A DNA stretch of 63,485 bases, the filler included, from Guillardia theta CCMP2712 (lineage: Eukaryota; Protista; Cryptophyta): assembly GCF_000315625.1 (NCBI RefSeq). It is 3 parts of 3 records of this genome, joined end to end, with 100 filler letters (N's around TTAATTAATTAA, not from the genome) between each part and the next. Parts side by side here need not be neighbours in the genome. Positions count along the whole stretch, not along the records: positions 20,181 to 36,051 come from NW_005434322.1; 2 more parts are not named here. The stretch is one strand, 5' to 3'. Under the pieces are notes generated by a model. The model was given only the letters and a program-made list of their open reading frames with translations, was not told the origin of the DNA and did not search any database. The first letter of the stretch is position 1. Every line of letters starts with the position of its first letter. Positions 20,181 to 37,463 of this stretch are shown one piece after another. The position numbers and the translations under genes were made by a program.

Positions 20181-23100
20181 GTAGTGAATATCTTTCAAGT
20201 CCCCGTAATCTGCAGGACAACAATCAGACGAAAGTACGATGCTTCTCACTACCTCTGATCCCACCTGCACCTCTGAACGAAGCTTCAATCTGCGACGTAC
20301 GTGTCAGAGGAGGAGGAGGAGGAGGAGGAGGAGGAGGAGGAGGAGGAGGAGGAGGAGGAAGAGGAGGAAGAGGAGGAGGAGGAGGATTCGTAAAGCCCTT
20401 CTTCCTCGATCAAATCACATATCTAGCTGCAATCTTTCTAGGGAAAGATTGACTCCATGTCCTCACAACAAGACAGAACATCAACATCTGACATGTATCC
20501 TTCGTTGAAGTGAAACATCAACTCCTTCTCACTCGTGTCAACTCACCGTGTATGCATTTCGTGTGAAGTTTCGCCACCCGAAGACTCGACTGCAGCCTTC
20601 TTTCCTGCGCGAAACTCTTTCGAGCGAAGAAAGTCACGTGAGATGATGGAGAAACATCAAGGAGAGGGTGAAAGCAAATGTCCAGATTGAGATGGGGAGA
20701 TTGAGATGAGAAGATTAAGATTTTTGATTTTGCAGCGAACACCATCAAGTTGTGAGGACGGAGGGTAGTCTGATATGATCAGCACAGAAAAGAAAGTTTG
20801 TGAAATGCTCAGCGCAACAAGAGAACACTTCTGATATGATCATCATGACAATATGATCTATGATCATCATGACTGATATGATCATCATGACAATATGATC
20901 ATCATGACGATGTGATCATTATGACAATATAATCATCATGACGATGTGATCATTATGACAATATAATCATCATGACGATATGATCATCATGACGATGTGA
21001 AGGATACTGGATGTGTTGTAGTCTCATGCTCACCGGAAGTTGCAGCTCTTGATGTCAAAGAAACTTGAGTTCATCGACAACAGTGTCTGATAACAAGCGT
21101 GAGGGTCAAAGTTGTCAAAGATCGCAGACAGACCGGCAAGAGCCTCTCAACGTAAGGACGAGACTTCTGGTCCATGGAACGATTCCTGTCCACCAGGGCG
21201 AGGAGAAGAGAGCAAGGAAAGATGAGAGATGGAAAGAGATCAGACTCAAACTTCTTCGATGACAGTTGACGTTGATTATCACCTGTCCGTGGACTCGAAG
21301 TTCCAATACCGACTGCAAGCATGAAGAGCATGAATTGCAAGAAAAAAAATCAGAAGAGGAGTTCACTACAAGAGGAGTAGTTGTTGTAGGATGAGGGAGA
21401 AAGCGGAGGAGGAGCGGGAGAGGAGGAGCGAGGAGTATGAGGAGGGTGTAGAAGGAGGAGAAGCTGAGAAAGAGGAAGAGAAGTTAAAAAGCTGCCGGTC
21501 TTCACCTGTCGCAACCATAACAGAAAATGTTGTTTTTCCTCGAATGTCCGTGGAGATCGATGAAGAGAACAATCTCTTTCTCTGATCGCATGTAACGCAA
21601 GTCAAGTAGAAACTTCATCGGATTTTGTAATGGATGTTCCTGACCTTTCGTGATCCTCTCGAGAAGAGATCTATAGTGAAAGATCGTTGGGTGAACAACA
21701 TCACTGTAGGAAAAGATGAAAGTCATGGGTAGAACGCATGTCACTTCTCCTCCTCCTCCTCCTCCTCCTCCTCTTCCTCCTCCTCCTCCTCCTCCTGCTT
21801 CTGATTCTCCTTCTCATTCTTCCTCTGCTCGTGCTCACCTTGGATTTCTCCATCGCCTGCAGACATTTGAATCACTAGATCGTAACATTGAGATTGACAT
21901 CACGTCCTTCCATACTAGTAACCATCATCTCTTACCACACTTTCATGTCTATCCTCCAGCACGTCATCATCTTCGCCTCTATCATCAACGACTCCATCAT
22001 CATCATCATCCTCATCATCGTCATCATCATCCAGTGATGTCATCAATCACAGCAAGCACAACATAGTCATCGTCATCATCATCATCATCAGCAGCAGCAG
22101 CAAACAAAGCGTATCATAAAGGTTTGGTGACGGTCTCACCTATTGAGATCGTTTCCTCCGAGCCCGCAGCGGTAATTCCCTACAGGGCGGAAGTCAGACG
22201 AGGGAGGGGAGGGCGAGGAGGAGGCGACGATAATCATCACCTATGATCACCCCATCCGGGTTGAGCATCGGAACAATCTTGAAGATGAAAGTGTCCAAGA
22301 GGTTGTCGGCAGTCTTTCATTATCGTCAGCCCCCATCAGGAAGAGAGGAGGAGGAGATAGGAAGGGGGAGGAGACGAGGAGGCGGCAGGAAGGGGGAGGA
22401 AACGAGGAGGAGACAACTCTGTTCGCACCTCGCAGCCACTGAGCAAAAAGTCCAGCAGGCCCTTCATCATCCAGGATGAGTTCGTTTCCCCTGCCATCGG
22501 ACTGGATCATCGAAACACCTCCAACCTCCTCCCTCCGTTCCTCAAACATGCACTCCCTCCTCCTCCCTCCCTCCATCTGTTACACCTACTCTTCGTCCTC
22601 CTGCCCACAACCGCCTCTTGCTGATCTCCCCATCTCACCCGGATGGACTCGGGCGCTAATCGCAATGACCTTCCTCGATCGGAGCACTTCAGGGTCTACC
22701 ACTTGAGATGTCAAGGTGAGGATCTGAAAACATTCTCAGCCTCCTCCATCTCTCCAGAGCTGTCGTTGAACCTCGCAGATGTTCCCAGCCTCGGTATCGC
22801 ACATCCTCTTCCTGCAGGACATGCGGGAAGTCAGGGAAAGGAGGAGACGTTTGAGCAGCAACGATGTCGCCAGACCTCCTGATCTTGCTCGCCTTGTTCG
22901 GATCTGACTGGATCTGGTCGATATGATTTCGGAGGTCTGCGGAGGAAACTCGTTGTGATGCACGGGGAAAGGAGGAGGAAGAAGAGGGATGACCTGTGAA
23001 GGTGAAGGGGTAGCAGTGAGCGATGTACACCCTGTCGCTCCATGTGAGTTGGGCAACACCAGCAGCCTCTGCTGAGAAATCACTTGTCGTCTTGATAACT

Positions 23101-25210
23101 GAACTTCATGGTGAAGGTCAGGGTGTAGAAGAACTTCTCCCCGTTGGCGCTTGTGCCCTCCTGTCCAGAGAGGAAACAGGAGAGTCAGAAGTCGACTAGC
23201 TGGTGACGGCGAGACCTTGTTGGCGCAGGAGGGAGCCGCTGTCTTCTTGACCTGTACGACCGAAAGAGCTCAGAAAGAGCAGACGAAAGACTGAAAGGAG
23301 ATGACAGCGAAGGAAAACGAAGGGAAGTGAATGCTTGTCTATGAAAGCATCGCCTTGCCTTCTTGTCCTTTCTCTTTGTTGTGTTCGGATAGTAGCAAAC
23401 GTTCTCTCCTGCTCTGTACCAACCTGACAGGAAGAACTTCAGCCGCTGGATATCTCATCCCGCAAAGATCTCGATGTCATGCTCACCGATTCCATCGCCC
23501 TCGGTCGATCGCTTCTCCGAGTACACGACAGGGAGGAGGCCGTGATTGTACAGACTGCCAATAAAGGTGTGAAGACATCTTCAACATTCGAAACATCGGC
23601 TCTGTCACCTGTCTGACTTGTAAAAGTTGATGATGTTGAACTGAGACCACATGTAAGAACTAGTGATCAACGTCCACACTGCTGCTGACAACCTTGTACG
23701 GCTGATCCTTGCGGGTGTTCGAGATGGAGAAGTAGAACCTGCGATCATGCATGTTTGACAAGCACGCAAACGGAAACTCCTCGCTCACCACTGGGTGTGC
23801 CCTCTAGTGTTGAAGTCCGTACTGAGCTCCAGATCATACTCCCACTCATTCACTCTGCATCAGCACGGAAATTTCAATGCTGGATTTTGCAGAAAGCCGC
23901 GAGAGGAAGAGCCCAAGGTCTCTTCCTTACCTCACTGCCTTCTCCAAGTTCCCGGACTCAAACCTTGACTCAAACACGAGAGTCGCATCTGGGGAAATGG
24001 TCGACCTCAATGCTTCGAGGGGAGGTGACATCATGTGTACCTTCTTCACCATTCAAGGTGTAGTATGGTTTGACATCCTGCTTCCTGACGTTCTGTCTGA
24101 CGTAGACGATGTCCTGGACACCATGATCAAACCTTACACTATACCTCCCTGACAACAAACCTGCATCGTCTTCGCACTCTGATCATGCGCCCGGTTCTGC
24201 CACGACATCAGACAAGCATGCTCTGTCGCAAACAAGGGAGTCATTCACGTTTGCAACGGCAATCTCATAGAGCGAGTGATCTTTCAACCCGTTGGGGAGT
24301 TTTTGCTGCAGGACGAGCAAAGTGTTAGAAATCCCGCGAAGGCCTTCAAGTGATGTCTGCATCCCCTTACCTTCAAGCACAATCCGATAGGCTCCTTTGG
24401 AGGGCAGCGGTGGACATGCACCGGGGTCCTGAGGGAGAAGAGCTTCAGAAAAATTCGCCTCGCAAGCATCGTGATCAACGGTGAGAGCAGCTGGCTTCCG
24501 TTCCCCGTCTTGATCACCTGTCAACTTCACGTCATCCTGTGAAGGTCACGGCGGCAACCGAGCAACCCACCAGCTCGTTGTCCTCCAATTCCCCCGGCGC
24601 GTAGTAGAGCGGCCTCGGAGTCAACCCTTGGATCACTTTCTGGAGGGCGCTGGTGGGGGAATGTGAGGCTGAGAAGATCTCGAGAGAACAGATGCTGCTG
24701 TACCTGGATCCTGCTTGATTGCCATCCGGAAGGCCTTTCCAGACATGAAAGCGTCAGCAACCTGTTGGGCCGGAGGAAGCAGAGGTGGAAGAGGATTGAG
24801 TGCACCGGAGGATGGAGAGGGAGAGGGAGAGAGGGAGAGGGAGAGGGAGAGGGAGAGGGGAGTGATAAAAAAGACGGAGAAGGGACGAGCACGCAGACAA
24901 AAAGCTGAGATCAGTGATCTCTCAACGAGCTATACCTTCCTCCCTGGAAGTAGCAAGTCAGCGGTCCGACGGGAGCAACGGGGAAGGATGCAGAGGTGAG
25001 TTCGAGCATGGCAGGATCATAACTTACGGGTTGCTGGCGTCGCTGCTAGAGTCAGAGTCTTGAGAATCGGTCTCGGACGCGTATCCGAACTCGTCGAGCG
25101 CTGGCAACGTCAACACCGAGTCAGCACATGGTTCTGATGGGACCGTGACACTCACTGCCGAAATCATCCGGGATCGATAATGCAGATGATGGAACAGTCT
25201 TCTTGATCAT
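20181..25210 (-). CDS. Cytosolic carboxypeptidase (CCP/AGBL/Nna1, M14D tubulin deglutamylase), many exons; 3' end runs into the gap, 5' end uncertain
   Basis: Motifs in order: FESRFESGNLEKAV, EYDLELSTDFNTRGHTQW|FYFSISN, FNIIN, FYTLTFT, VYIAHCYPFT, SARVHPGE (Zn ligands), LKIVPMLNPDGVI|GNYRCGLGGNDLNR, FIDLHGHSRKNNIFCYGC, FDIKSCNF, IEASF (catalytic Glu). Confidence 0.92.
20831..20998. repeat. Intronic degenerate minisatellite (ATGATCATCATGACGAT-like, ~15-nt unit)
   Basis: Repeated atgatcatcatgacaat / gtgatcattatgacaatataatcatcatgacgat units inside a CCP intron. Confidence 0.8.
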
Positions 25211-27671
25211 GGCGTCTTAAATCTTCATCCTAGATGAGAAGGATCAGAGCGAGGTATGCTTTCCTTTGCAAAGCAATTCGCAACGCCAATCAACGGCGTG
25301 AGGTACGATCTCGAAAGGTGGCACCCAATGCGTTGCAGTCAACAGAGATCTACACGGTAAACCCGAAAAACGAAATTTATGCCCTGCTAACGATCAAGAT
25401 GCGCAGAGTTGAGTGCGTCGTCAATCGATTCGAGTATGAAAGCACGGGTTGCAAATTTGAATTCAGGGAACAAGGACGTAACAGAATGCATTCGGATTTC
25501 AAACCAATCTCTCAAAGATGATGCAGATCTATGGACTTTGGAAGAAAGCCTCTAAACAACTGAAAGGTGAAGCTACTGACGACCGTGAAAAGCTTGAAAG
25601 CCACTAGGTTTCGTCAAGGAGGTCAATAGTCGGACAGAGCCATGGCTCCTCGCTGAACAGAAAAGATCCATAACAACCATCCGCAGCTGCTTGAACTCCT
25701 ACAGACATCATCTTATCCTCACTCCTCTTGATTCTTTATGTCTCCTCTCCTCTCTTCCCCCTCCCCTCTCTTCTCTCCGCTCCTCAGCATGGTTTTAGCT
25801 CATGGTTTTATCCCCCACTGCACTAACTTATCGGTTCCGCCACCCCTACCCCCCACCACCCCCATTATCCGCCCTCCTTCAGTATACTTCACTACCCACC
25901 CCTGCTGGTTCTGTCGTGAAAGTCAATATTAGCTGAGTACCCTACCCACCATAGCAAAGTGGCATTAAAGCCCAGGTACTCAGGCCAAGAAATGACTACC
26001 CCTCTGTTTACATTGCAAAATACCCCCTTCTGAATGGAAACACTTACCACCCCACCCTTCTTTTTGAGTCTACGGGACCCCATGTAATTATGAAAGACGA
26101 CCCGGTACCGTACAGTTGAGTGACCCCATACCACCACACTACCCTGACCTTTCTACACCCCTGAATCCCAGGTCAGAAGGGGGGTACAAGTGAGGTCAAT
26201 AGCACTTTGGTATCTCACATTTTTTTTTTGCCAACTCCAATCCTTTTTTTTTTCCAAAAAAAAACACAATGGACCCCCCTTATTCCCTCCAAATGTACCC
26301 CCCACCCGGTCGGGGGGGAGGGGGAACTTCCCGGAAATTGTACCCACCGGATATCCCGGTGTCCCGTGCTACGGTGCCATGTGCCGGCAGTGCCAGTAGT
26401 CGGAGTTGCTCGAGGCCCGGCGCGCGCGGCGGCGGCGGGGCCCCGGCGGCCTGGCGTAGCCGGGATGATCACCGGAAGCCTGAGCCTCTGAGTGAGCACT
26501 GGCCCAGCCCGGTGCCCGACCCACCGTGCGACACTGAAAAGTACAATTCACTTTCGGACCATGTGCGGAGCCTGGCGGGACCGTAACTGTGACGGACCGG
26601 CACGGTGGGGGACCGATGGCGCCCCAGCCTGTACAGTCGGACTGCCGCAGTGCCGCGCGGCCACCGGTTTGCGGCCGGGCCCGGGCCCGCCGGGCCCGGC
26701 CGGCCGACTCTCAGCCGCGATGCACTCGGAATCCCGGTAGTCAGGGAATCGCTTTTCTTGGCTCCCAAAATATTTGAAATTATCTGGTACCTTTTGACAA
26801 TTCACCTCGAAATTAATGGAGGGTTTTAATGAAATCAATGGAATATTGTACGTTACAGATGGAACCGTCAGTCCGCTGTCGGTCTTCCGCTTGAACCATG
26901 TCCTTCCCACAGAGCAACTGCATCTGCTCCTCCTCTCCTCTCCTCTCCTCCCTCCCTCCTGCTCCTCCTCCCTCCTCTTCTTCTATTTCGGAACTTCTGT
27001 TTCTACTTCTCTCCTCCAGCTTGTACACCTCTCCGTTGTGTTCGGCACACTTTCAATACTTCATTTTAGCATCGGTTTTTTAGATTCATTCGTTTTGCTT
27101 GTGGCTCGTGCTGCAATCTGCTGCATTCTAGATGAAGGCATTTGAATTTGTGCATATTTTCACATCAATCTTCTTGCCACATCAATCTTTCTTGTTATCT
27201 GTCAACGAGAACTTCATATAATGCAATACCTTGTCGCGTGCGGGCTTGAGTCGCTTCATGGAAATTGCCGTGAGAGTGACGAATCTGCAGAGCCTTTTGG
27301 TGACTTGTCCTATGACTGTTATGCATACTCTGATTTTGTACGTTCTTCTTACTGTGGTCGCAGGAGGCATCACAATCGCCCCTGTGCACCATTCGCGGGG
27401 CTTGTCAAGGAGGAAGAGGGAGTGATGAACCCTTAGGCTCTTGAGCTTCCTCCTCCCGCGCTGAGGGAAACTTATCCTTGGGGATTGAAGGATACAAGGA
27501 AGGCTGAGCAGAGCTGCTATCCCCTTGGTGCAGGTGTTGATCTGTTGTTGAACACTTCACCCGAGCACATACCAGTGTCTACATGCAGAGGTGCACTGTT
27601 GACTTGAAAGCGTTGTGAAGAACCTCGATACACTGTGTGCTTGGTAGCACCTGGATCAGAGCCCCTCGAAG

Positions 27672-30600
27672 ATGTTCTCAGCTCATGAGAAGCTCAAAGT
27701 GAGGAGCCAGAAGGTCAACCTGGACATCGACCTCGCCCAGAAGCAGGTGTCAGGAAACACCCAGGTAGAAATCCTTCAGAAGAAGATCGACCAGTCCATC
27801 ACCCTTCACGCTAGACAGCTGCATGTCAAATCGGTTTCTATCAACGGCGTTGCCGCAAGACATCACATGGTGCACAACACCCTGTTGGACAAGATCTGCC
27901 CGTCGGCCCATGACAACCACCGGGAGACCCGCGACCTTCTCAACTTCACCATTGCGTACAGGCGGGCGTATGAGAAGGCAGACAAGGGGGAGTTGTACAT
28001 TGAGATTCCTGCCAATGACCCAGCTGGAAACCCCTTGGTACCCAAAGAGCCAGGTGAGAACGAGACAGGAGCCAACGACGCGTCTATGGGGATCTGGAAG
28101 GTGGAAATCAAGTTCATGCTGAGGAATCCTCGGGGAGGCCTTATCTTCTCAGGGGGCCTGCCTGGTGACGTCCCAAGTCACTGCTACACTGACGGGCAGA
28201 TCGATTCCGCACGGATGTGGTTTCCTTGCTGGGATAGGCTCGATGTCAGCTATCCTCTGGAGGTTCGCGTGTCAGTCCCCGAAGGAAACATCGTGCTGTG
28301 CTCTCTGCCGGAGGTGGAGACGAGAGTGAAGAAGGGCAAACTGAGGTCGACGTTCATCAGTCAAGAAGGTTTCAACCTCCCCGTGCGGTCTCTGGCTCTG
28401 GCAGCGGGCCCATTCATCCGCCTCCCCGATCCAGGGATGTCCCAAAGAATCGTCCACTACTGCCTCCCACACGTCAACGCAGAGCAGGTAGCTCTTTGAT
28501 CCAACACTTGGACTTTGTTCGCTGACCAGATTGCATTGCTGCAGAGACTGGCGTTCTCGACTCAGTATGTCTCCCGCAGCGTGGAGCTGCTGGAGCAGAT
28601 GCTGGACTCAAGGCTCCCCAAAGAGCCCTACAAGCAGGTGTTCGTGTCGAGTCCGCCGCAGGACATCGACTCTCAACCGTCGCTGACTATCGCGTCCTCA
28701 TCCCTGCTCTTTGACCCGTCCAACCTCTTCCGGACGTTTGAGACTGTCCGCAAGCTCGTGCAGGCTCTGGTCTCCCAGTGGTTCGGGATCCACTCCTGGC
28801 TCCGACCTGACACTTGGCAAGACACATGGCTGCTCCTTGGGTTGGGGAGACATGTCACGAATCTGATCATGAAGAAGCACTTTGGCAACGCTTACTACCT
28901 GCATCACATCTGGGAAGAAACAGCCTACGTCTGTCAGACCGACGGAGCATCGATGAAACCGCTGTTTCACGACGCTCCCTCTCACCCCTCGGAGCACCTG
29001 GGCGACTTCAAGGCGAGGAAAGCAGCGCTGGTGATACGGCTGATAGAGAAGAGGATCGGGGAGGCGAATTTGAAGAAGGTGCTGGGCCACCTGCTGTCGA
29101 AGACGTGTCGAGGGCCGGAGTACATCAGCACGAAGAGGTTCTTCAAAGCGGTCAGGAAGTGTTCAGGGCAAGACATCGAGTCGCATCTGTCTCACTGGAT
29201 CTTCGGGACTGGGTGCACAACGATGACCGCGAACTTCAACCTGAACAAGAAGAGGAATCAGATCGAGATAGCAATGAGGGTGAGCAACGAGCAGCTCAGG
29301 GCTAAGTGCAAGCAGGACAGCGTCACCATCCGAGTGCACGAGACTGAAGTGACGTACGACCGGACGGTGAAGATGGAGGCCGACGAGTTCCTTGTGGACG
29401 AGTTTGCGCACCAGTCGAAGTGGAAGAAGACGAAGAAGGAGAAGGAGGCAGAGCGAGAGGGGGAGGACGAGATCATCGCAGAGATCGTGGAGAGAAACGA
29501 CACGCCTCTCCTCTGGATTCGAGTGGACCCAGAGCTGCACTGGATACGCAAAGTCGAGATGACGCAGACGGACTACATGTGGATCTATCAGCTGTACAAG
29601 GACCGTGACGTCGTGGCGCAGATGGAGGCGATCGATGGGCTGTGCAAGCAGTTCATCAAGCCGATAGTGGGGCCCGACGGGGAGATCCAGCAGACGAGCG
29701 AGTACATCAAGTCGTTGGTAGTCCGCGTACTCGTGGCGACGCTAGAGAACTCTCAGCTGTTCCATCAAGTGCGCGGCCATGCTGCCCTCGGTCTGGCAAG
29801 GCTCCGGGTAGTCGACCCGGAGAGCGGGTCCCTGAACTTCATGGGGGTGGAGCAGCTCCTGGCGTGCGCGAAGAAGTTTTGCTTCGAAGGTGACACGGAG
29901 CTCCCGAGACTGAACAACTTCTCGAAGCTCGACGACTACTTCGTCATCCTCCAGGTAGAAACGTTGCTGTGCTGTCCTCCACAGGCCCTGACAGGCTGAC
30001 TGCAGGTGATCAACGCGCTAGCTGTGTGCCGGGAGGAGGCTGGTGGGACGTCGGAAGGGTCTGAGGCGACGAAGGAAGTCTTTACCACCCTCTACCTCCT
30101 CCTCAAGTACAACGACAACTCGCAGAACGAGCTCTCGGACGGGGAGTACTTGGCCACTCTTATCCTCGCCCTCGGCCGCGCCACCTCCTCGCTGGAGGGT
30201 GAGGCCGACAAGACCCAGAAGATCGTGGCGAGGTACCTGCAGAGAGACCAGCTGATTCCTTCCTACTGCCATGCTGTGACCTGCTCGTCCCTGTTCACTC
30301 TGCAGAGGCTGCAGGCCCGGGGCCTGATCCCCATGGACCTCGAGATCTTCGAGACTCACTGCAAGGTGGGGCACAGCATCGACGTCAGGTGCGCAGCCTT
30401 CCGCTGCCTCGTCCGGCTCTCTCAGTTCAAACCGTCGCTGATCAAGCTGATCTTCACGGTCCTCCACCTCGAAAGGTCCTACCGTATCCGGAGCTGCGTT
30501 CTAGCCGAGTATCTTGACGGGCCTGCTTTGAAGATCAAGGCGAGCAGGGCGCTGGTAGCGAGCAACAGGGACAACCTTGCGATAGTCGATGAGATCTGGA

Positions 30601-33600
30601 AGTTCCTGAATGAGTCTACAGCGTACGATGTCAGTTGCCGGTTCCAGACAGCGAGCTTGTACTTCGTCCTGTTCGGCAACGGGATCCCCGAATGCCTCGT
30701 AGACAATCCATGGGCTGCTGACCTGAAGCCGATCCCTGGGCAGAAGGAAGTTGACTCGTTGCGATGGGACCCCAAGAAGCAGGAGCTCAAGGTCAAGTTT
30801 CAGATCGGCAGGAAGGACGCCAAGGTTGCCAAACGGCATCACTACCAGCAGGAGGAGCCTGTTCCCAGCCCCTTCCAGCCGTCCCCTCCAAAGAAGGCCA
30901 AGGGCATGCAGGCTCATCAGATGTCTGAGGAAGCCATGCGGCTCGCTCTGGAGAAGAAGGCTCGGAAAGAGCAGGAGGAGCGGGAGATGCGCGCGCGCGA
31001 GCGCGAGATCGGCCGTAACGTCCGCGAGCAGTACGAAGGGGGAGAGGTCGCCCAGTCGCCGTCTGCTCCCCGCGTGGTGTTCAACTGGCCTCCTGGCCGG
31101 GCAGTGACGAAGACCAAGTACGTCAGGTTCAACTTCGTGTGCACTCCTCCTCCCGGCCGCGGCTCCACTCCGGAGCCTCCCGAGGGCTGGGCGAAGCCCA
31201 TAGTGAGGAAGCCGAGCTCGGGCAAGAAGGAAAAACCGCCCAAGATTCGCTCTTCCGACGCTCCCAGGGTGCATCTCGATCACTATGCTGCCCCGGCGCT
31301 GGCCTCGGCCCCGGCTGCTGCGTCCTCTGCCGCTGCCCCAGCCCCTGCTGCTCACGATCAAGTGCCCGTGAGGCAAGCAGAAGCTCTTCCTGCTGGTGCT
31401 CTAGATATGTCGGCAGAGGAGAAGGCGAACGCAGGCCAGAAGCTGATCAAGCCGATGCCAATCTTCAACTGGCCTCCTGGAAACGTTCCCAAGCGCAAGC
31501 ACGTGAAGTTTCACTTCTTCTGCTCTCCTCCCGCGGGGTATCAGGGCAATGCCGTGTACGACGAGGTTGCACACCTTGACTCGCTGTTCCACGTCAACAG
31601 CATCTTGGAGGTGTTCACCTGCGACGACTGGTACAACGCCAAGATCACCCGCATCGACGTGTGCAGGGCGCTGGGGAGGGCGAAGATCGAGGTGCTGTAT
31701 GAGCAGGAGCCCGGGGTGTTCGGGTGCCAACCCAACGACGAGACGAGCTTCGAGATCTGCAAGAACATCGATGGAGTCTGGAGCAGCAGGGTGATGAGGC
31801 GACTGGTTACCGAGGAAGCTCGAGCCGCCCCCCTCCCTCCTCAGGCCCCCCAGGCCTCACAGGAGGTCAAGCCCCCGACAGAGGCACACGCGGACAAAGC
31901 GGTGGCTGAAGTTGCCAAGGATGCTTCCAGCTCTCCCCTGAGCAAGGCTATGGAGGAGAAAGAGGGAGAGAGGGAGAGGGAGAGGGAGAGGGAGAGGGAG
32001 AGGGAGAGGGAGAGGGAGAGGGAGAGGGTGGATAAAGAGAAGGAGAGAATGGATAAGGAGAGGGACAAGGAAAAAGAAAAAGCGAAAGAGAAGGAGAAGG
32101 AGGACAAGGACAAGGAGAAGAAGGAAAAGGAGGAGAGAAAGGAAAAGGAGAAGCCCAGTCAGGAGTGTTCGCTCGTCAAGGGACTCGTGGAGTCTCTCGG
32201 CAAGGGAGACGTCGCAAACCCTTCAGCAACTCCTGAGGCTTCTTCCCAGCTCGCATCCCCCCAGTCCGTTGCCGAGGTCCACATCCCGAAGCCCAGCGAG
32301 TGGACGTCGAACAACCCCTGCCTCTGGCCCCTCTACTACACCCGGCTGGAGGGCATCAAGATCGTGTTCCATCGGGTGAAAGACTACCCCCACGAGTACA
32401 AGAGGGTCAGCGTCAAGTTGGACCGCAAGGAGGACTGGAGAAGGGATCTTTCCCAGGAGGCCCTCAGCAGGTCCGGCCAGTCTCCGATGCAGCAGGACGG
32501 CGACAGCTCTCGGTCCACCCCGACCATCACCCCCTCGCCTTCTTCGCTTGTCCCTTCCCCCAGCCTCTCCACGATCTCTCTCCCTCCGAAGCTCGTCGGC
32601 TCGCACAACCAGATCGACGAGGCAGCGTTCCAAGGGATGCCGGCGCCGCAGCCCGACCGCCCTGCCTCTAGTGCGAATGTAGGGGAGAGGAGGCAGGAGA
32701 AGACGCAGGAGCAGGGGGAGAAAGAGGACAGGAAGGCTGGGAAGGGACTTTCTGAGAACGGAGAGCATCGAGAGAGCTCAAAGACTGAAGTGGAAGGGAA
32801 GGAAAAGAACCGCAAGGATGGCGAAGCGGCGGGGCGTTCGGTCTCACCGAGTGATGCTGGAAGGAGCAGCGCGACCCCTGGCGCACGAAAGGAGGAGAAG
32901 CGTTCGAGCCCCAGTGGTGGACAGGAAGAGAAGCAGGAGAAGGAGAAGGAGAAGGAGAAGGAGAGGGAAAGAGTATCTCCCAGCCTGAGTGATCAGGGGC
33001 AGGACCCGGAGGAGATGAGGATGAAGATCATTCACGCGCTCGCTCTCAAGGACATGACAAGGAACGAACTGGCTGACTTCCTCCAGCTGGAGGGCAAGAT
33101 CTCCAAGAGCCTCTGCAAGAGGGTCGCGACCCCCGTGCAGGGCGACGGGGAGGCCAGGAAGTACAGGCTGAGGGACGAGTGCTGGGAGTCAGTCCGGGCT
33201 GACGGGTGCGGGTTCTACAGCGAAGACGACAGGAGGGCCGTGGAGGTGAAGCTGTCGGAGAGGAGGGCGACGACTGCGGGCCTGCTGGCGGCCGCCCAGA
33301 CGTCGTTGGGGGACAAGGAGGAGGCGAGCGAGGGAGCGAGCGCGATTGCCAAGGGAGGAGGGCCAGGCTCCGCCTTCAAGCCTCCCAAGGGTGACGCGGC
33401 AAAGGTCAAGAAGGAGCCACCAGCTGGGGAGGGCGCAGCAGATCGCTCGAAGAGTCCAGCTGGGGTATCAGGCGGGGAGCGAACTAAGAGTCCAGCTGGG
33501 GTGTCAGGTGGGGAGCGAACTAAGAGTCCAGCTGGGGTATCAGGCGGGGAGCGAACTAAGAGTCCAGCTGGGGTGTCAGGTGGGGAGCGAACTAAGAGTC

Positions 33601-35073
33601 CAGCTGGGGTATCAGGTGGGGAGCGAACTAAGAGTCCTGCTGAGGTGTCAGGTGGGGAGCGAACTAAGAGTCCAGCTGGGGTATCAGGTGGGAAGGGGCT
33701 GGGGAAGGAGGCGGGCAAGGTGAGCCCGTCGAGCATCGGGGCGGACAAGCTGGCGAGCATCGCCATCCCGAAGAAGAAGAAGAGTGAGGAGGGAGAGAGC
33801 AGGTCCGTCACTCCTGCGTCCTCGAGCCCTGGGGAGAAGAAGAAGCGCTCGCCCGATGAAGGCTCCGGAGCTGTTGAGGCCCAGCTGAGCAAGAGGACGA
33901 AGGGAACAGACGGGGAGGAGAAGGCAGCGAGCAGGAAGAGGGACGGGGAGCAGGAGGTGGGCGAGGGCAAGGTCTGCTCCTCTTTTCCTGCTGGGTGTTG
34001 AGCTGATATTTTCGATTTTTCTTTCTGCCCTTCTCTGCCATATTCCCTTCCCTTCCCTTCCCTCTGCCTCCCCCCTCTCCCTCCTTCTGTCTCTCGCTCC
34101 CTCTCCTCCTCCTTGTTGTGTTGCCTGCTCTATCAGGTGGGTCAGAGCGAGCCCAGCGAAACTTTGCCACAAGTCCGAGTGAAGGAGGAGAAATCTTCTC
34201 CCTCCTCCCCCCCCTGCCCTTCTCCTCCTCGGATTCTCGCCGGGAACTCCAACTTAGAGGTCGAGCTTGTGATGTTGACCGTATGTGAGAGTGACATGAA
34301 CGAGGCAGACAAGCAGGGCCAGGCAGGAGGATGAAGACGAGAAGGAGAGGAAGGAGAGAGAGAGGAAGGAGAAGGAGAGGGTGAGGGAGGAGGAAGTCAA
34401 ACGCAAGGAGAAACAGTCGGATCGAGGAAAGGAAGCGACTGAGAGGGAGGAGGGGAAAGCACCAGAAGATCCTCCGAGCTTCAAGGCAAAGGAAGTCAAA
34501 ACAGAGGACAGAGACAATCTGCCAGACAAAGGCGAGCAAGTCAAGGAGGGCAGGCGAGACAAGCCGGAGCAGCAAGAGAGGAAGAGGGATTCTGTCAGCC
34601 CCTCGAATCCTGAGCCCTCCATGGGCGATCGGGAAAAGTCCCGCCCTCAGTCGCGGGAGGGAGAGGCGGGTGGGAAGAGGAAGAGGGAGAAGTCAGACGA
34701 GCCAGAGGCCAAGGAGAAGAAGAGGAAGAGAGAGGAAGGAGGGTCCAAGTCCAAGAGCCCCGACAAGAGCGGAGACGCCAAAGAGACTTGTGGCCAACAG
34801 CCTGCGGACAGCAGCGGAAGGTGGAGACGAGATCATGGCTGTGCTTCCTTTTCTCCGTCCTCCGTCCTCGCATCACGCTCCTCCCTTTCTGTCCCCCCTT
34901 CCTCACCCCCTTCTTTGACACATCCTCCCAACGTATCACGTTCTCTTGCTCCTCAATGTCGACTCTACTCCCCTCGCTCGCCTGCCTGCCTGCCTGCCTG
35001 CCTGCCTCCTCCTCCTCCTCCTCCTCCTCCTCCCGTCCTCCCCGCCTCTCCTTCACCCACCACCTCTTGCTGA
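27672..35073 (+). CDS. TAF2: Transcription initiation factor TFIID subunit 2 with a very long C-terminal extension
   Basis: Aminopeptidase-like fold (ITLHARQL, ARMWFPCWD, LVSQWFG) plus the TAF2 signature LLWIRVDPELHWIRKVEMTQTDYMWIYQLYKDRDVVAQMEAIDGL, NNFSKLDDYF and LLKYNDNSQN. Exons at ~27672-28486, 28545-29954, 30006-~33971 and ~34325-34820; the 3' end is approximate. Confidence 0.93.
33441..33692 (+). repeat. Coding 36-bp tandem repeat x7, encoding (E/D)R(T/S)KSPAGVSGG
   Basis: Seven in-frame units of gagcgaactaagagtccagctggggt(a/g)tcagg(c/t)ggg within the TAF2 tail. Confidence 0.95.
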
Positions 35074-35383
35074 CTAGCACTGCAGTGTTTCCCATCTCAG
35101 AATCCCCTCCCCGGAGCTCCCGGACTCGGACTGATCTTGTAGATACGAGAGCCCCCAACTTGTATATGTTAAATCAAAACTTAATCTCCTCATCTCGTTA
35201 ACGCCTCCCACCCCCGTCGACCCTGGACCCAGTTCGCTGCCCTACTTCATACCCCTCCTCCCTCCTTCACCCCCGCCTCTCTCGCTCTCAAACCCTCCTC
35301 GTCCCTCCTCCCTTAGCTCACATCTCCTTCTTGGCGCAGTACCTTCAACTCCCTCAGTCTCTCTCCGCACGACATCAGTCCCC

Positions 35384-37463
35384 TTACCCGAACGTCTGCG
35401 CACAGAGGGAAGCAGCCGCCTTTCTCTCCTCCTCCTCCACCTTCTCCTCGTTCGCGTGCTGCGTCAAGACCTCCAGCATCTTCTCCTCATCAGCCTCCCA
35501 CATGTCCATGCAGACTTCGTGGTAGACGTCCGGGAGGTCATCGTGCCGGGTGTAGCTGCAGCCATGGCCGTGAGCTGATGGGCCGGAGGAGGAAGGAGGA
35601 AGAAGAGAGGAGGGAGGAGGGAGGAGGGAAGAGGGAGGAGGGCTGTCTGCGGGCGGGCGTTGGGGGGGGGGGACGGGGGGTGTGGGGCGGGGGGGGGAGG
35701 GGGTGGTAGGGACGTCTCGACGCACAAGTTCTCGAGGTGGCATATTGATGGTTGATGCCGTCACGCTCAAATCAGGTACTTAGTCCACCTCTTTGGAACC
35801 ATGAAGGTCGTGTTGATGCAGGATCAGGCTTCCCTCAACTCCTGTGTCATTCAACACACTTCGTTTGTGACTGGGTGAAGAGTTCCGAGTCCGAAAAGAG
35901 TCACGTCATACATCACTTCGAAACCCACGTTCTCCAATCGCAGTTTGTACCCGCTACTTGGCAAAGGTTCCCTCAACCTCGCCCTGATGTATTTGGAAGG
36001 GTCCAAATCGGATGGACATCAGGTCCTGCCCGATGTTGCTCAACCTGTAGGNNNNNNNNNNNNNNNNNNNNNNNNNNNNNNNNNNNNNNNNNNNNTTAAT
36101 TAATTAANNNNNNNNNNNNNNNNNNNNNNNNNNNNNNNNNNNNNNNNNNNNACCTGCTCCTACCCTGCCGTTACCCTCCCCTTGGCCCCCCTCCTTTCCT
36201 CCCTCCCTCCCTCCCTCTCTCTTCCCGTCCTCTTCCTGTTCGATCTCCCTCACCGAAACGCAGTTTCCTCCCTCTCCGCAGCCTCCTTCAACATCGCTTG
36301 CATGCTCTCAGTGAGCTGCTTGATCTCCTTGTCCTGCTCCTCTGTCAGACTTCCAACATCTCCACCATCTCCCTTCACCTTCTGCCGTGTCAACTGCCTC
36401 GCGCCCTCAGCCATCTCCTCAAGACGCTGCTGCTGCTGCCTCTGCAGCTGCTCCACCACCTCCGCAGGGACCATCCTGCTTGCAAGGGATGCTCGTCAAG
36501 AGGACGGGAACCAAGGGGCACATCTCATCTCTCCTCTCCTCCTGCACATTCAGCCTCCTGTCCTCTCCTTTCCCCCTCCTCTTTCGTTCTTTCCTGCCTT
36601 CTGTTCCCCTTGACTCCCACTGCGCTCCTGCTACTTCGCTCCACCTTGCTCCTGTCTCCTTCGTCCTCCTCTCCTCTGCCCTTACTCTTTCTCTACCTAG
36701 CTCTAGCATCCTCCTCTCCCTTCTTCCCTCGTCTTTCATCTCCCCACGACCTCCTCCCTTCTGCCTCATGCATGCGGTACCTCGTGTGTGCAGGGCTGAG
36801 CGGAGGAGAGCTCTTCCCCGCAGCATCCTGCCATGCTTCGCCTTCCCCTCCCTGGCATGGGCGAAGTTCCGCCTCAGGGGTCGGAGAGCCGCATGCTTGA
36901 CTGTCAGACAGCTGATGGGGCGGTCGTTGAAACGACGGGGCCTCCTCGCCGCCCATGGCCTTGCCGTCGAGGATGCTACCGACTATCTCCCGCGCATGCT
37001 CAGACGCCAGGGACAGCTGAGACATGATCGCTGACGCGCTGCCTCCCTCTCTCGACCTGCGGCTCGTCTCCGTGCTCCGCACCATCCTCCTGGCATGCTC
37101 AACTGAGAGAGCCCCGACTTTCTCCAAGGAGGCGGCAAGAGGATCAGGAGGAGGCTTCCCCGTGGCAGCTTCATGAGGAAGTAATGAGCTCTCTCTGTTT
37201 GTGGTCTCTTCATCCTCCATCATCCTCGGAAGGAAGGGATCTCCTCCCCTCTCCCCTCTCTCCTTTCCCCTGGGCCCCTGGGCCCTCCCTGCCCTCCCTG
37301 CCCCTGCTTCTACCTCGACCCCCCCAGGGCCTCCCTCCCTACTGGCTCTTTGGTCCCTCCTTCTTCGTTCTTTGTCTTCTGCCTTTGGCCTCGCCTCTCC
37401 CCTCCCTTAGCCTCCCTGAATCCCCTCTCTGGCCCTTTCCCGCCACTCTTTCGCTCTCCCGCA
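35384..37463 (-). CDS. Multi-exon hypothetical protein spanning an assembly gap
   Basis: Coding-like exons at 36780-37223, 36250-36474 (coiled coil, ends TTTCG|GTGAG) and 35384-35580 (YHEVCMDMWEADEEKML). No family recognised. Confidence 0.45.
36052..36151. other. Assembly gap with artificial TTAATTAATTAA spacer
   Basis: Same 44N + linker + 44N structure as 20081-20180. Confidence 0.95.

What the first reader, a model, noticed from the sequence alone, without database searches (positions are those of the whole stretch)
33015..33250. ELL-like winged-helix domain embedded in the TAF2 tail
Seen: within an uninterrupted 1331-aa TAF2 ORF and flanked by disorder lies MRMKIIHALALKDMTRNELADFL...LCKRVATPV...KYRLRDECWESVRADGCGFYSEDDRRAVE. 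Known: the second N-terminal winged helix of Pol II elongation factor ELL has the pattern R-x-R-x-IHLLAL(K)...EL...VA...Y-x-L-K/R-D...W-x-x-YS-x-x-D-R. Animal and budding-yeast TAF2 lack such a domain. Inference: a fusion linking the initiation factor TFIID to an elongation-factor module.
Basis: partly seen in the sequence, partly recalled or inferred. Interest (0 to 1): 0.7.

Follow-up and report, generated by a model that had tools for sequence, protein, structure and literature searches.

The report
ELL-type winged helix inside TAF2 tail
A general transcription factor gene (TAF2) of a probably cryptophyte alga carries, in its very long floppy tail, a small folded domain otherwise known from the elongation factor ELL; this is a real, conserved but lineage-restricted domain arrangement whose function is still unknown.

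Summary
Window 33006-33284 (+) encodes a ~90-aa winged helix in the last exon (30006-34001, 1331 codons) of a three-exon, 2073-aa TAF2 gene.

- **ELL homology.** Cut out, the segment passes Pfam's ELL cut-off (32.6 vs 22.9 bits, profile positions 186-279 of 282). Its only significant sequence matches among solved structures are human ELL2 and ELL. An alignment-based AlphaFold model (pLDDT 81) matches the ELL/ELL2 N2 domains best (Foldseek E about 1e-4; Z 9.9).
- **Transcription.** Spliced RNA contigs confirm two tiny introns (57 and 51 nt). They cover the tail without any joint and break only at low-complexity repeats.
- **Relatives.** An exhaustive search of 1.84 billion proteins found seven related environmental clusters with the same tail. 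On four contigs from three of these lineages a TAF2 core lies directly upstream on the same strand. It also found one stand-alone cryptophyte ELL-like protein.
- **Absence elsewhere.** Human and Komagataella TAF2 lack the domain.

Only ELL's winged-helix subdomain is present. The EAF-dimerisation/Pol II-binding part and the occludin-homology domain are missing. The same fold also occurs in UBR1. This is a new domain arrangement of known parts. A link to elongation is speculation.

The parts
27672..28487 (+). TAF2 exon 1 (272 codons, starts at ATG; Peptidase_M1_N-like)
   Evidence: ORF from ATG 27672. Pfam Peptidase_M1_N 4.4e-10. Spliced contigs in two runs, GT at 28488.
28488..28544 (+). intron 1, 57 nt, GT..AG, holds an in-frame stop
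   Evidence: Joint 28483>28541 (cut +4) in contigs of runs X1 and X2. Sequence read.
28545..29954 (+). TAF2 exon 2 (470 codons: Peptidase_M1-like, TAF2 Ig-like domain, start of TAF2 TPR repeats)
   Evidence: Pfam TAF2_3rd 6e-24, TPR_TAF2_C, Peptidase_M1. Human TAF2 is the best PDB match, E 1.6e-44.
29955..30005 (+). intron 2, 51 nt, GT..AG, holds an in-frame stop
   Evidence: Joint 29951>30003 (cut +3) in contigs of X1, X2 and X4. Sequence read.
30006..34001 (+). TAF2 exon 3 (1331 codons plus stop): end of the TAF2 TPR domain (30072-30704), then a ~1100-aa tail
   Evidence: ORF. Pfam TPR_TAF2_C 4e-32 at residues 23-233. RNA contigs cover 30003-31951, 32137-32920 and 32978-33479 without joints.
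33006..33284 (+). ELL N2-type winged-helix domain (the finding); sequence core 33015-33266
   Evidence: Pfam ELL 32.6 bits, above cut-off. PDB hits are ELL2/ELL only. AF2 model pLDDT 81 with helices and strands at residues 11-103 of 32976-33290. Foldseek and VIA best hits are 2e5n and 2doa. 20 invariant columns in 8 TAF2-tail copies.
31074..31211 (+). conserved tail island 'NWPPG...GRGSTPEPxxGW', copy 1
   Evidence: Aligned with five relatives, many invariant columns. No Pfam family.
31458..31538 (+). second, shorter 'NWPPG...KHVKFxF' copy, seen only in the window
31575..31805 (+). conserved tail island, possibly Tudor/Agenet-like (VEVFT..DWWNA(K/R)I..YEQ.PG)
   Evidence: 20 invariant columns in 7 sequences. 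No PDB or Pfam sequence match. Atlas feature hits to Tudor/Agenet at 0.83-0.87 are a lead only.
32310..32456 (+). conserved tail island 'PC.WPLYYTR...YPH.YKRV.V...W.RDL'
   Evidence: 19 invariant columns in 7 sequences. No PDB or Pfam match.
31968..32153 (+). coding purine-rich hexamer repeats (ERER.../EKEK...) where RNA contigs break
   Evidence: Tandem repeats. Skipped repeat 31952-32136.
32935..32968 (+). coding AGGAGA repeat (EKEKEK) just upstream of the domain; second contig break
   Evidence: skipped repeat 32921-32977.
33450..33692 (+). 36-nt tandem repeat, 6.8 copies, coding SPAGVSGGERTK, downstream of the domain

Best explanation
The segment is a genuine ~90-residue winged-helix domain homologous to the N2 (second N-terminal) domain of elongation factor ELL. 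It is built into the long, mostly disordered C-terminal tail of a bona fide TAF2 (TFIID subunit 2) of 2073 aa. It is one of several folded or conserved islands strung along that tail, and the whole arrangement is kept in a set of related, so far only environmental, eukaryotes. It is therefore a stable lineage-specific accretion, not an assembly or annotation accident. The source is probably a cryptophyte near Guillardia. Shown: homology, fold, reading frame, transcription and conservation. Inferred: the domain works as a tethered docking module, more likely for a protein partner than for DNA because its net charge is about zero. It would give promoter-bound TFIID an extra contact surface. It does not bring ELL's elongation activity, because the EAF-pairing/Pol II-lobe-binding part and the occludin-homology domain of ELL are missing.
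For: TAF2 identity: Pfam Peptidase_M1_N, Peptidase_M1, TAF2_3rd and TPR_TAF2_C; human TAF2 at E 1.6e-44. Same frame and transcript: a 1331-codon ORF from the TPR domain through the domain; spliced contigs from three runs join exons 1-2-3 and run on to 31951; contigs of similar depth cover 32137-32920 and 32978-33479 with no joint. ELL homology: Pfam ELL 32.6 bits vs cut-off 22.9; ELL2 and ELL are the only significant PDB sequence hits for the single sequence and for a TAF2-tail-only profile; the AF2 model (pLDDT 81, pTM 0.73) hits 2e5n and 2doa first in Foldseek (E 1.2e-4, 2.8e-4; the next hit is E 0.02), scores Z 9.9 in VIA, and matches a chordate ELL cluster at TM 0.80 in the Atlas. Conservation: an exhaustive phmmer found seven environmental clusters at 36-40% identity, all with the ELL match limited to profile positions ~185-280 and with collinear tail islands; contigs L001, L003/L004 and L005 hold a TAF2 core directly upstream on the same strand. 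Charge: net -3 to +3.
Against: No RNA contig bridges the two low-complexity repeats (31952-32136, 32921-32977), so continuity of a single transcript rests on the open frame and equal depth. The only true raw-read RNA run gave one read. The ELL match is missing in the whole-ORF Pfam scan. The alignment used for folding had only 12 rows, including three or four cryptophyte ELL-like rows. The UBR1 winged helix is structurally nearly as close (Z 9.3), and Atlas features point to PF22960. No experiment bears on function. Neutral charge is weak evidence against DNA binding.
Confidence: 0.8

Rival explanations
1. One reading: the domain physically couples TFIID to Pol II or the early elongation machinery, using the same partner as the winged helix in ELL. 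On this view TAF2 carries an in-cis piece of elongation-factor function.
For: The domain is specifically ELL-like by sequence. In ELL2 it lies inside region R1 (residues 7-350), which is needed for elongation activity and Pol II binding (PMC11586470).
Against: The contacts seen by cryo-EM are made by the ELL2-EAF1 dimerisation domains on the Pol II lobe, plus contacts to the external 2 and protrusion domains (PMC10716050). The dimerisation part is absent here: the Pfam match covers positions 186-279 only. No EAF-binding or OCEL part is present. I found no separate function reported for the winged helix.
Confidence: 0.12
2. It is a member of a broader ELL/UBR1-type winged-helix superfamily and was not derived from ELL itself. 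The ELL label is then only the nearest named family.
For: Pfam PF22960 (UBR1-like winged helix) is the second hit at 19 bits. Atlas feature hits are PF22960 clusters. Yeast Ubr1 residues 909-1012 align at Z 9.3 over 98 residues. Fungal ELL1 clusters themselves partly carry PF22960, so the two families overlap.
Against: PF22960 is below its cut-off (19 vs 27 bits) while ELL is above its own. No Ubr1 chain appears in either PDB sequence search at E up to 10. A reciprocal hit goes to a protein with winged helix plus OCEL domain, the ELL architecture.
Confidence: 0.1
3. The domain binds promoter DNA and extends TAF2's known contact with initiator and downstream promoter DNA.
For: Winged helices often bind DNA, and the lower-ranked fold matches are MarR/ArsR/PadR repressors. 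The human TAF2 tail is reported to touch promoter DNA non-specifically (bioRxiv 10.1101/2024.02.05.578926).
Against: Net charge is about zero in all copies. The matches to DNA-binding repressors are much weaker (Z 6.5 or less) than those to ELL and UBR1, whose winged helices are not known to me as DNA binders.
Confidence: 0.12
4. Gene-model artefact: the tail, or the domain, belongs to a separate transcript or is removed by splicing hidden in the repeats.
For: Contigs break at 31952-32136 and 32921-32977. In the relatives the core and the tail were called as separate ORFs.
Against: There is one open frame of 1331 codons with no stop from the TAF2 TPR domain to beyond the domain. No joints appear in the tail in three runs, and depth is similar on both sides of the breaks. 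The breaks coincide with hexamer repeats that de Bruijn assemblers cannot cross. Separate ORFs in the relatives come from a gene caller that ignores introns. Order and strand are conserved.
Confidence: 0.04

Closest known systems
ELL / ELL2 N2 domain (human; PDB 2doa, 2e5n; Pfam PF10390 positions ~186-280)
   Same: Same fold and detectable sequence homology, with 23-30% identity in the structural alignments. Shared motifs are IH(L/A)LAL, Y-x-L-(K/R)-D and W..YSE.DRR. The length and the closing long helix also match.
   Different: In ELL the domain follows an EAF-pairing, Pol II-binding N-terminal part and is followed by a Lys-rich region and an occludin-homology domain. Here it stands alone between disordered stretches at residue ~1750 of TAF2.
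Stand-alone ELL-like protein of the cryptophyte Guillardia theta (XP_005828860.1, 378 aa; P0021/P0009)
   Same: Its winged helix is 30-33% identical to the TAF2 copy. It comes from the lineage the window probably belongs to.
   Different: It has the ELL architecture, a winged helix at 179-276 followed by an OCEL domain. Its own winged helix is further from human ELL2 (E 0.62) than the TAF2 copy is (E 0.0012).
Human and yeast TAF2 C-terminal tails
   Same: A C-terminal disordered, charged, Ser/Lys-rich tail follows the TPR/HEAT-like domain. The human tail is an interaction platform (nuclear speckles, SRRM2, non-specific DNA contact; bioRxiv 10.1101/2024.02.05.578926).
   Different: The human tail is about 200 aa with no folded domain reported. 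Human (1199 aa) and K. phaffii Taf2 are not hit by the domain profile. Here the tail is ~1100 aa with at least four conserved islands.
UBR1 winged-helix domain (Pfam PF22960; yeast Ubr1 residues 909-1012, PDB 7mex)
   Same: Nearly equal structural similarity (Z 9.3, 98 residues aligned).
   Different: The sequence match is below the family cut-off (19 vs 27 bits). There are no UBR box, ClpS-like or RING parts.

Membership tests
TAF2 (TFIID subunit 2) | Aminopeptidase M1-like N-terminal domains | tested here: met
   Pfam Peptidase_M1_N 4.4e-10 (exon 1) and Peptidase_M1 9e-8 (exon 2).
TAF2 (TFIID subunit 2) | TAF2 Ig-like third domain and TAF2 TPR/HEAT-like C-terminal domain | tested here: met
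   PF25316 at 6e-24; PF25577 at 2.8e-10 (exon 2) and 4e-32 (exon 3). Best PDB match is human TAF2, E 1.6e-44.
TAF2 (TFIID subunit 2) | Incorporation into TFIID (binding TAF8/TAF1) | not testable with these tools
   No partner sequences of this organism are at hand.
ELL N2-type winged-helix domain | Sequence match to the C-terminal third of Pfam PF10390 above the curated cut-off | tested here: met
   32.6 bits vs 22.9, profile positions 186-279. Five relatives pass in whole-protein scans.
ELL N2-type winged-helix domain | Winged-helix fold closest to solved ELL/ELL2 N2 structures | tested here: met
   Foldseek 2e5n E 1.2e-4 TM 0.64 and 2doa E 2.8e-4. VIA Z 9.9 for both. Atlas chordate ELL TM 0.80. 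The model comes from a 12-row alignment, pLDDT 81.
ELL elongation factor (whole protein) | N-terminal EAF-dimerisation / Pol II-lobe-binding part (PF10390 positions ~1-185) | tested here: not met
   The Pfam match starts at profile position 186. Scans of the tail pieces 30708-31925 and 32223-32585 found no ELL match, and the whole-ORF scan listed no ELL match at all.
ELL elongation factor (whole protein) | C-terminal occludin-homology (OCEL) domain, PF07303 | tested here: not met
   No PF07303 match in exon 3 or in the piece downstream of the domain. It is present in the cryptophyte stand-alone ELL-like protein.
ELL elongation factor (whole protein) | Stimulates Pol II elongation | not testable with these tools
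   Needs a biochemical assay.
UBR1-like winged helix (PF22960) | Sequence match above the curated cut-off | tested here: not met
   19 bits vs cut-off 27. No Ubr1 chain in the PDB sequence searches.
UBR1-like winged helix (PF22960) | Structural similarity to the Ubr1 winged helix | tested here: inconclusive
   Z 9.3 vs 9.9 for ELL, a tie within 1 unit. Atlas TM 0.71-0.72 vs 0.80 for ELL. The two families overlap in fungal ELL1 clusters.

The most novel reading that the evidence does not exclude
In cryptophyte-like algae TFIID has acquired, on the TAF2 tail, a set of reader/adaptor modules: an ELL-type winged helix, a possible Tudor-like domain and two unknown conserved islands. The ELL-type winged helix would contact the same surface on Pol II or an elongation partner as it does in ELL. 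That would make a direct hand-over from initiation to early elongation, built into a general transcription factor.
Probability: 0.1. Interest if true: 0.7.

Novelty: new variant of a known kind. Interest (0 to 1): 0.45.

Why it matters
TAF2 tails are regarded as disordered interaction platforms, and what they recruit differs between lineages (in humans, SRRM2 and nuclear speckles). A conserved folded ELL-type winged helix in a TAF2 tail is a domain arrangement I found in no paper of the searched library. It offers a natural experiment on what ELL's poorly understood N2 domain binds, because here it is uncoupled from the rest of ELL. It also shows that the TFIID of a little-studied algal lineage has a greatly enlarged TAF2 of 2073 aa with several uncharacterised conserved modules. 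The practical weight is modest: one lineage, no functional data.

Tried and rejected
- **Word-index searches found nothing useful.** The domain region found nothing. The TAF2 TPR region found nothing. The Guillardia ELL-like protein found only its own cluster, because low-complexity words filled the candidate list. These blanks say little.
- **Single-sequence AlphaFold was useless** (pLDDT 50). It was replaced by the alignment-based model.
- **P0006 was rejected as a relative.** This 1409-aa hit of the exhaustive search is a repeat protein with many weak partial matches.
- **The true RNA raw-read run X19 gave one read only**, so it says nothing about strand, ends or level.
- **No sequence identification of the other tail islands.** Pfam scans of the tail pieces and PDB profile searches of the two islands tested (Tudor-like and PC.WPLYYTR) found nothing.
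- **Flanking sequence is uninformative.** Ten flanking ORFs have no Pfam family, and there are no Rfam matches in the piece.
- **No complex prediction was run,** because I claim no specific binding pair.
- **The three exons were never joined into one sequence.** All searches were done exon by exon by reference, and the length of 2073 aa is arithmetic from the exon coordinates.
- **Whether the same genome has a stand-alone ELL could not be tested,** because only this piece is available.
Full report
**Gene and transcript**

The piece 20181-36051 holds one recognisable gene on the + strand. ORFs at 27672-28499, 28515-29999 and 30006-34001 lie in the same frame. They match the Pfam families that define TAF2: Peptidase_M1_N, Peptidase_M1, TAF2_3rd and TPR_TAF2_C. 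Exon 2 hits human TAF2 at E 1.6e-44 among solved structures.

Contigs from three public runs, laid on 28300-34250, skip 57 nt and 51 nt with GT..AG ends. These runs therefore contain RNA, and the gene has two tiny introns. Read from the sequence, they are 28488-28544 and 29955-30005. Each is a multiple of three and holds an in-frame stop.

The exons are 27672-28487, 28545-29954 and 30006-34001. All searches were run exon by exon by reference.

Its first 233 residues finish the TAF2 TPR domain, and the remaining ~1100 residues are the tail.

In the tail the RNA contigs cover 30003-31951, 32137-32920 and 32978-33479 with no joint. They break only at two coding hexamer repeats, ERER.../EKEK.... 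Depth is similar on both sides of the breaks (407, 388 and 298 in run X2). The domain at 33015-33266 lies wholly inside one unspliced contig.

Continuity across the two repeats is therefore inferred from the open frame and the equal depth. It is not shown by a bridging molecule.

**The domain**

| Test | Result |
|---|---|
| Pfam on a 145-aa piece | PF10390 (ELL) 32.6 bits vs curated cut-off 22.9; profile positions 186-279 of 282 only |
| Pfam second hit | UBR1-like winged helix PF22960, 19 bits, below its cut-off of 27 |
| phmmer vs all PDB sequences | only ELL2: 2e5n at E 0.0012, and 7okx |
| Profile of the eight TAF2-tail copies alone vs PDB | ELL2 7e-6, ELL2 in 7okx 9e-5, ELL (2doa) 2e-4; next rows (two designed proteins) at E ~0.04, nothing else below E 0.5; no TAF2 chain |
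| AlphaFold2, single sequence | failed, pLDDT 50 |
| AlphaFold2, 12-row alignment | pLDDT 81, pTM 0.73; order helix, helix, helix, two strands, short helix, long C-terminal helix |
| Foldseek vs PDB | 2e5n (E 1.2e-4, TM 0.64) and 2doa (E 2.8e-4); all other hits are generic winged-helix repressors at E 0.02 or more |
| VIA-align | ELL Z 9.9, ELL2 Z 9.9, yeast Ubr1 residues 909-1012 Z 9.3; everything else 6.5 or less |
| ESM Atlas by shape | chordate ELL cluster TM 0.80 (96 residues, rmsd 2.3); fungal ELL1 and UBR1-type clusters at 0.66-0.72 |

Some fungal ELL1 clusters themselves carry PF22960. The ELL and UBR1 winged helices therefore look like one superfamily. By sequence this copy falls on the ELL side.

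The ELL match was not listed when the whole 1331-aa ORF was scanned, probably because of the low-complexity tail. Five relatives do pass the cut-off in whole-protein scans.

**Relatives**

An exhaustive phmmer search of 1.84 billion representative proteins with the 105-aa piece gave nine hits.

- **P0006** is a false hit, a repeat protein.
- **P0009** belongs to a cluster that includes Guillardia theta XP_005828860.1. This is a 378-aa protein with the winged helix at 179-276 followed by an occludin-homology domain, which is the ELL architecture.
- **The other seven** (P0001-5, P0007, P0008; 36-40% identity) come only from metagenomes or run assemblies. Their ELL match is likewise limited to profile positions ~185-280.

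These seven share the whole tail plan with the window, in the same order:

1. an NWPPG...GRGSTPEPxxGW island;
2. a VEVFT..DWWNARI..YEQ.PG island;
3. an HPCYWPLYYTR..YPH.YKRVRV island;
4. DSNKSSP..APPVLSH..LLAPQVVR;
5. the winged helix;
6. GSAF.DVK;
7. a basic IPRKR stretch.

On the contigs that encode them, a TAF2 core lies directly upstream on the same strand. In L003/L004 this is Peptidase_M1, TAF2_3rd and TPR_TAF2_C. In L005 and L001 it is TPR_TAF2_C. tblastn with the three window exons shows collinear matches at 47-54% identity in the core. In those contigs the core and the tail were called as separate ORFs, but by a gene caller that ignores introns.

The arrangement 'TAF2 core plus tail with ELL-type winged helix' is therefore conserved across fairly distant relatives. 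Within the domain, 20 columns are invariant among eight copies, while the flanks cannot be aligned.

**Who lacks it**

Full-length human TAF2 (1199 aa) and the Komagataella phaffii Taf2 chain (1756 aa as deposited) are among the PDB sequences searched. The domain profile does not hit them even at E 10. Other lineages such as plants, SAR groups and haptophytes could not be surveyed properly. The single-sequence exhaustive search found no TAF2-like hit outside the seven clusters, but a profile search might reach further.

**Source organism**

The source is not stated. Three things fit a cryptophyte:

- introns of 51-57 nt;
- the nearest stand-alone relative of the domain is a cryptophyte protein;
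- the tetranucleotide signature correlates at 0.92 with a Guillardia theta scaffold (L006), against 0.49-0.71 with the other loci.

The Guillardia ELL-like gene also has introns of about 49-85 nt. Together this points to Guillardia or a close relative. It is suggestive, not proof. If it is right, the same genome also has a stand-alone ELL-like gene, and the TAF2 copy is an extra winged helix rather than a relocated ELL.

**What it probably does**

Nothing here tests function. In ELL2 the winged helix lies inside region R1 (residues 7-350), which is needed for elongation activity (PMC11586470). The contacts seen by cryo-EM, however, are made by the ELL2-EAF1 dimerisation domains on the Pol II lobe, with further contacts to the external 2 and protrusion domains (PMC10716050). 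The TAF2 tail has none of the dimerisation part and no occludin-homology domain.

All copies of the domain are close to electrically neutral. That fits a protein-docking role better than non-specific DNA binding. My best reading is a tethered docking module on a long flexible tail. It would be one of several modules that enlarge the interaction repertoire of TFIID in this lineage, much as the short human TAF2 tail recruits SRRM2 (bioRxiv 10.1101/2024.02.05.578926). The idea that it couples initiation to elongation is possible but unsupported, and I give it about 0.1.

**Verdict**

This is a new domain arrangement of known parts, conserved in a narrow lineage. I found no paper describing an ELL-type domain in TAF2. 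Interest is moderate.

Noticed in passing
window 31074-31211 and 31458-31538: A conserved motif, NWPPG..(K)TK.VK..F......GRGSTPEPxxGW, opens the tail in all relatives. The window has a second, shorter copy about 125 residues further on that the relatives lack. No Pfam family matches.
   Followed up: partly
window 31575-31805: An ~80-aa conserved island (VEVFT..DWWNA(K/R)I...YEQ.PG.Y...DE.E...DG.W) with 20 invariant columns. It has a beta-rich look, and weak Atlas feature hits point to Tudor/Agenet families (0.83-0.87). It may be a histone-mark reader in the TAF2 tail.
   Followed up: partly
window 32310-32456: A conserved island, (H/N)PC.WPLYYTR...K.YPH.YKRV.V...W.RDL, with 19 invariant columns and no Pfam or PDB sequence match. 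Its fold and function are unknown.
   Followed up: partly
window 33450-33692: A near-perfect 36-nt tandem repeat (6.8 copies, 93% matches) codes SPAGVSGGERTK just downstream of the winged helix. It is absent from the relatives, so it is probably a recent expansion.
   Followed up: no
window 28488-28544 and 29955-30005: Both introns are tiny (57 and 51 nt), multiples of three, start GTAG and end TGCAG, and each carries an in-frame stop. All three exons lie in one frame.
   Followed up: yes
window 20181-36051 vs L006 (Guillardia theta scaffold JH993020.1): The tetranucleotide signature of the piece correlates at 0.92 with a Guillardia theta scaffold. That is higher than the correlation between the two halves of the piece (0.80) and far above the other loci. 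This hints at the source organism.
   Followed up: partly
P0021 / L006:6001-7723: The winged helix of the cryptophyte stand-alone ELL-like protein is further from human ELL2 (E 0.62) than the TAF2-tail copy is (E 0.0012). The related representative P0009 (93% identical) gets no Pfam ELL match at E 0.01, only the OCEL domain.
   Followed up: partly
ESM Atlas clusters: Fungal ELL1 clusters (PF28522) partly carry the UBR1-like winged-helix family PF22960. The Pfam families for the ELL and UBR1 winged helices therefore overlap and are probably homologous.
   Followed up: no
window 20181-27600 and 34100-36051: No ORF of 100 aa or more beside TAF2 matched a Pfam family, and no Rfam family was found. 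Neighbouring genes, if any, remain unidentified. GC falls from ~0.60 in the TAF2 exons to 0.45-0.50 upstream.
   Followed up: partly
window 33970-34001; ends of P0007, P0008, P0011: The protein ends ...SSFPAGC. The relatives show ...SPG.SF..CC at the matching place, and some ORFs run on beyond it. This may be a conserved C-terminal Cys motif or an unrecognised intron boundary in the relatives.
   Followed up: no
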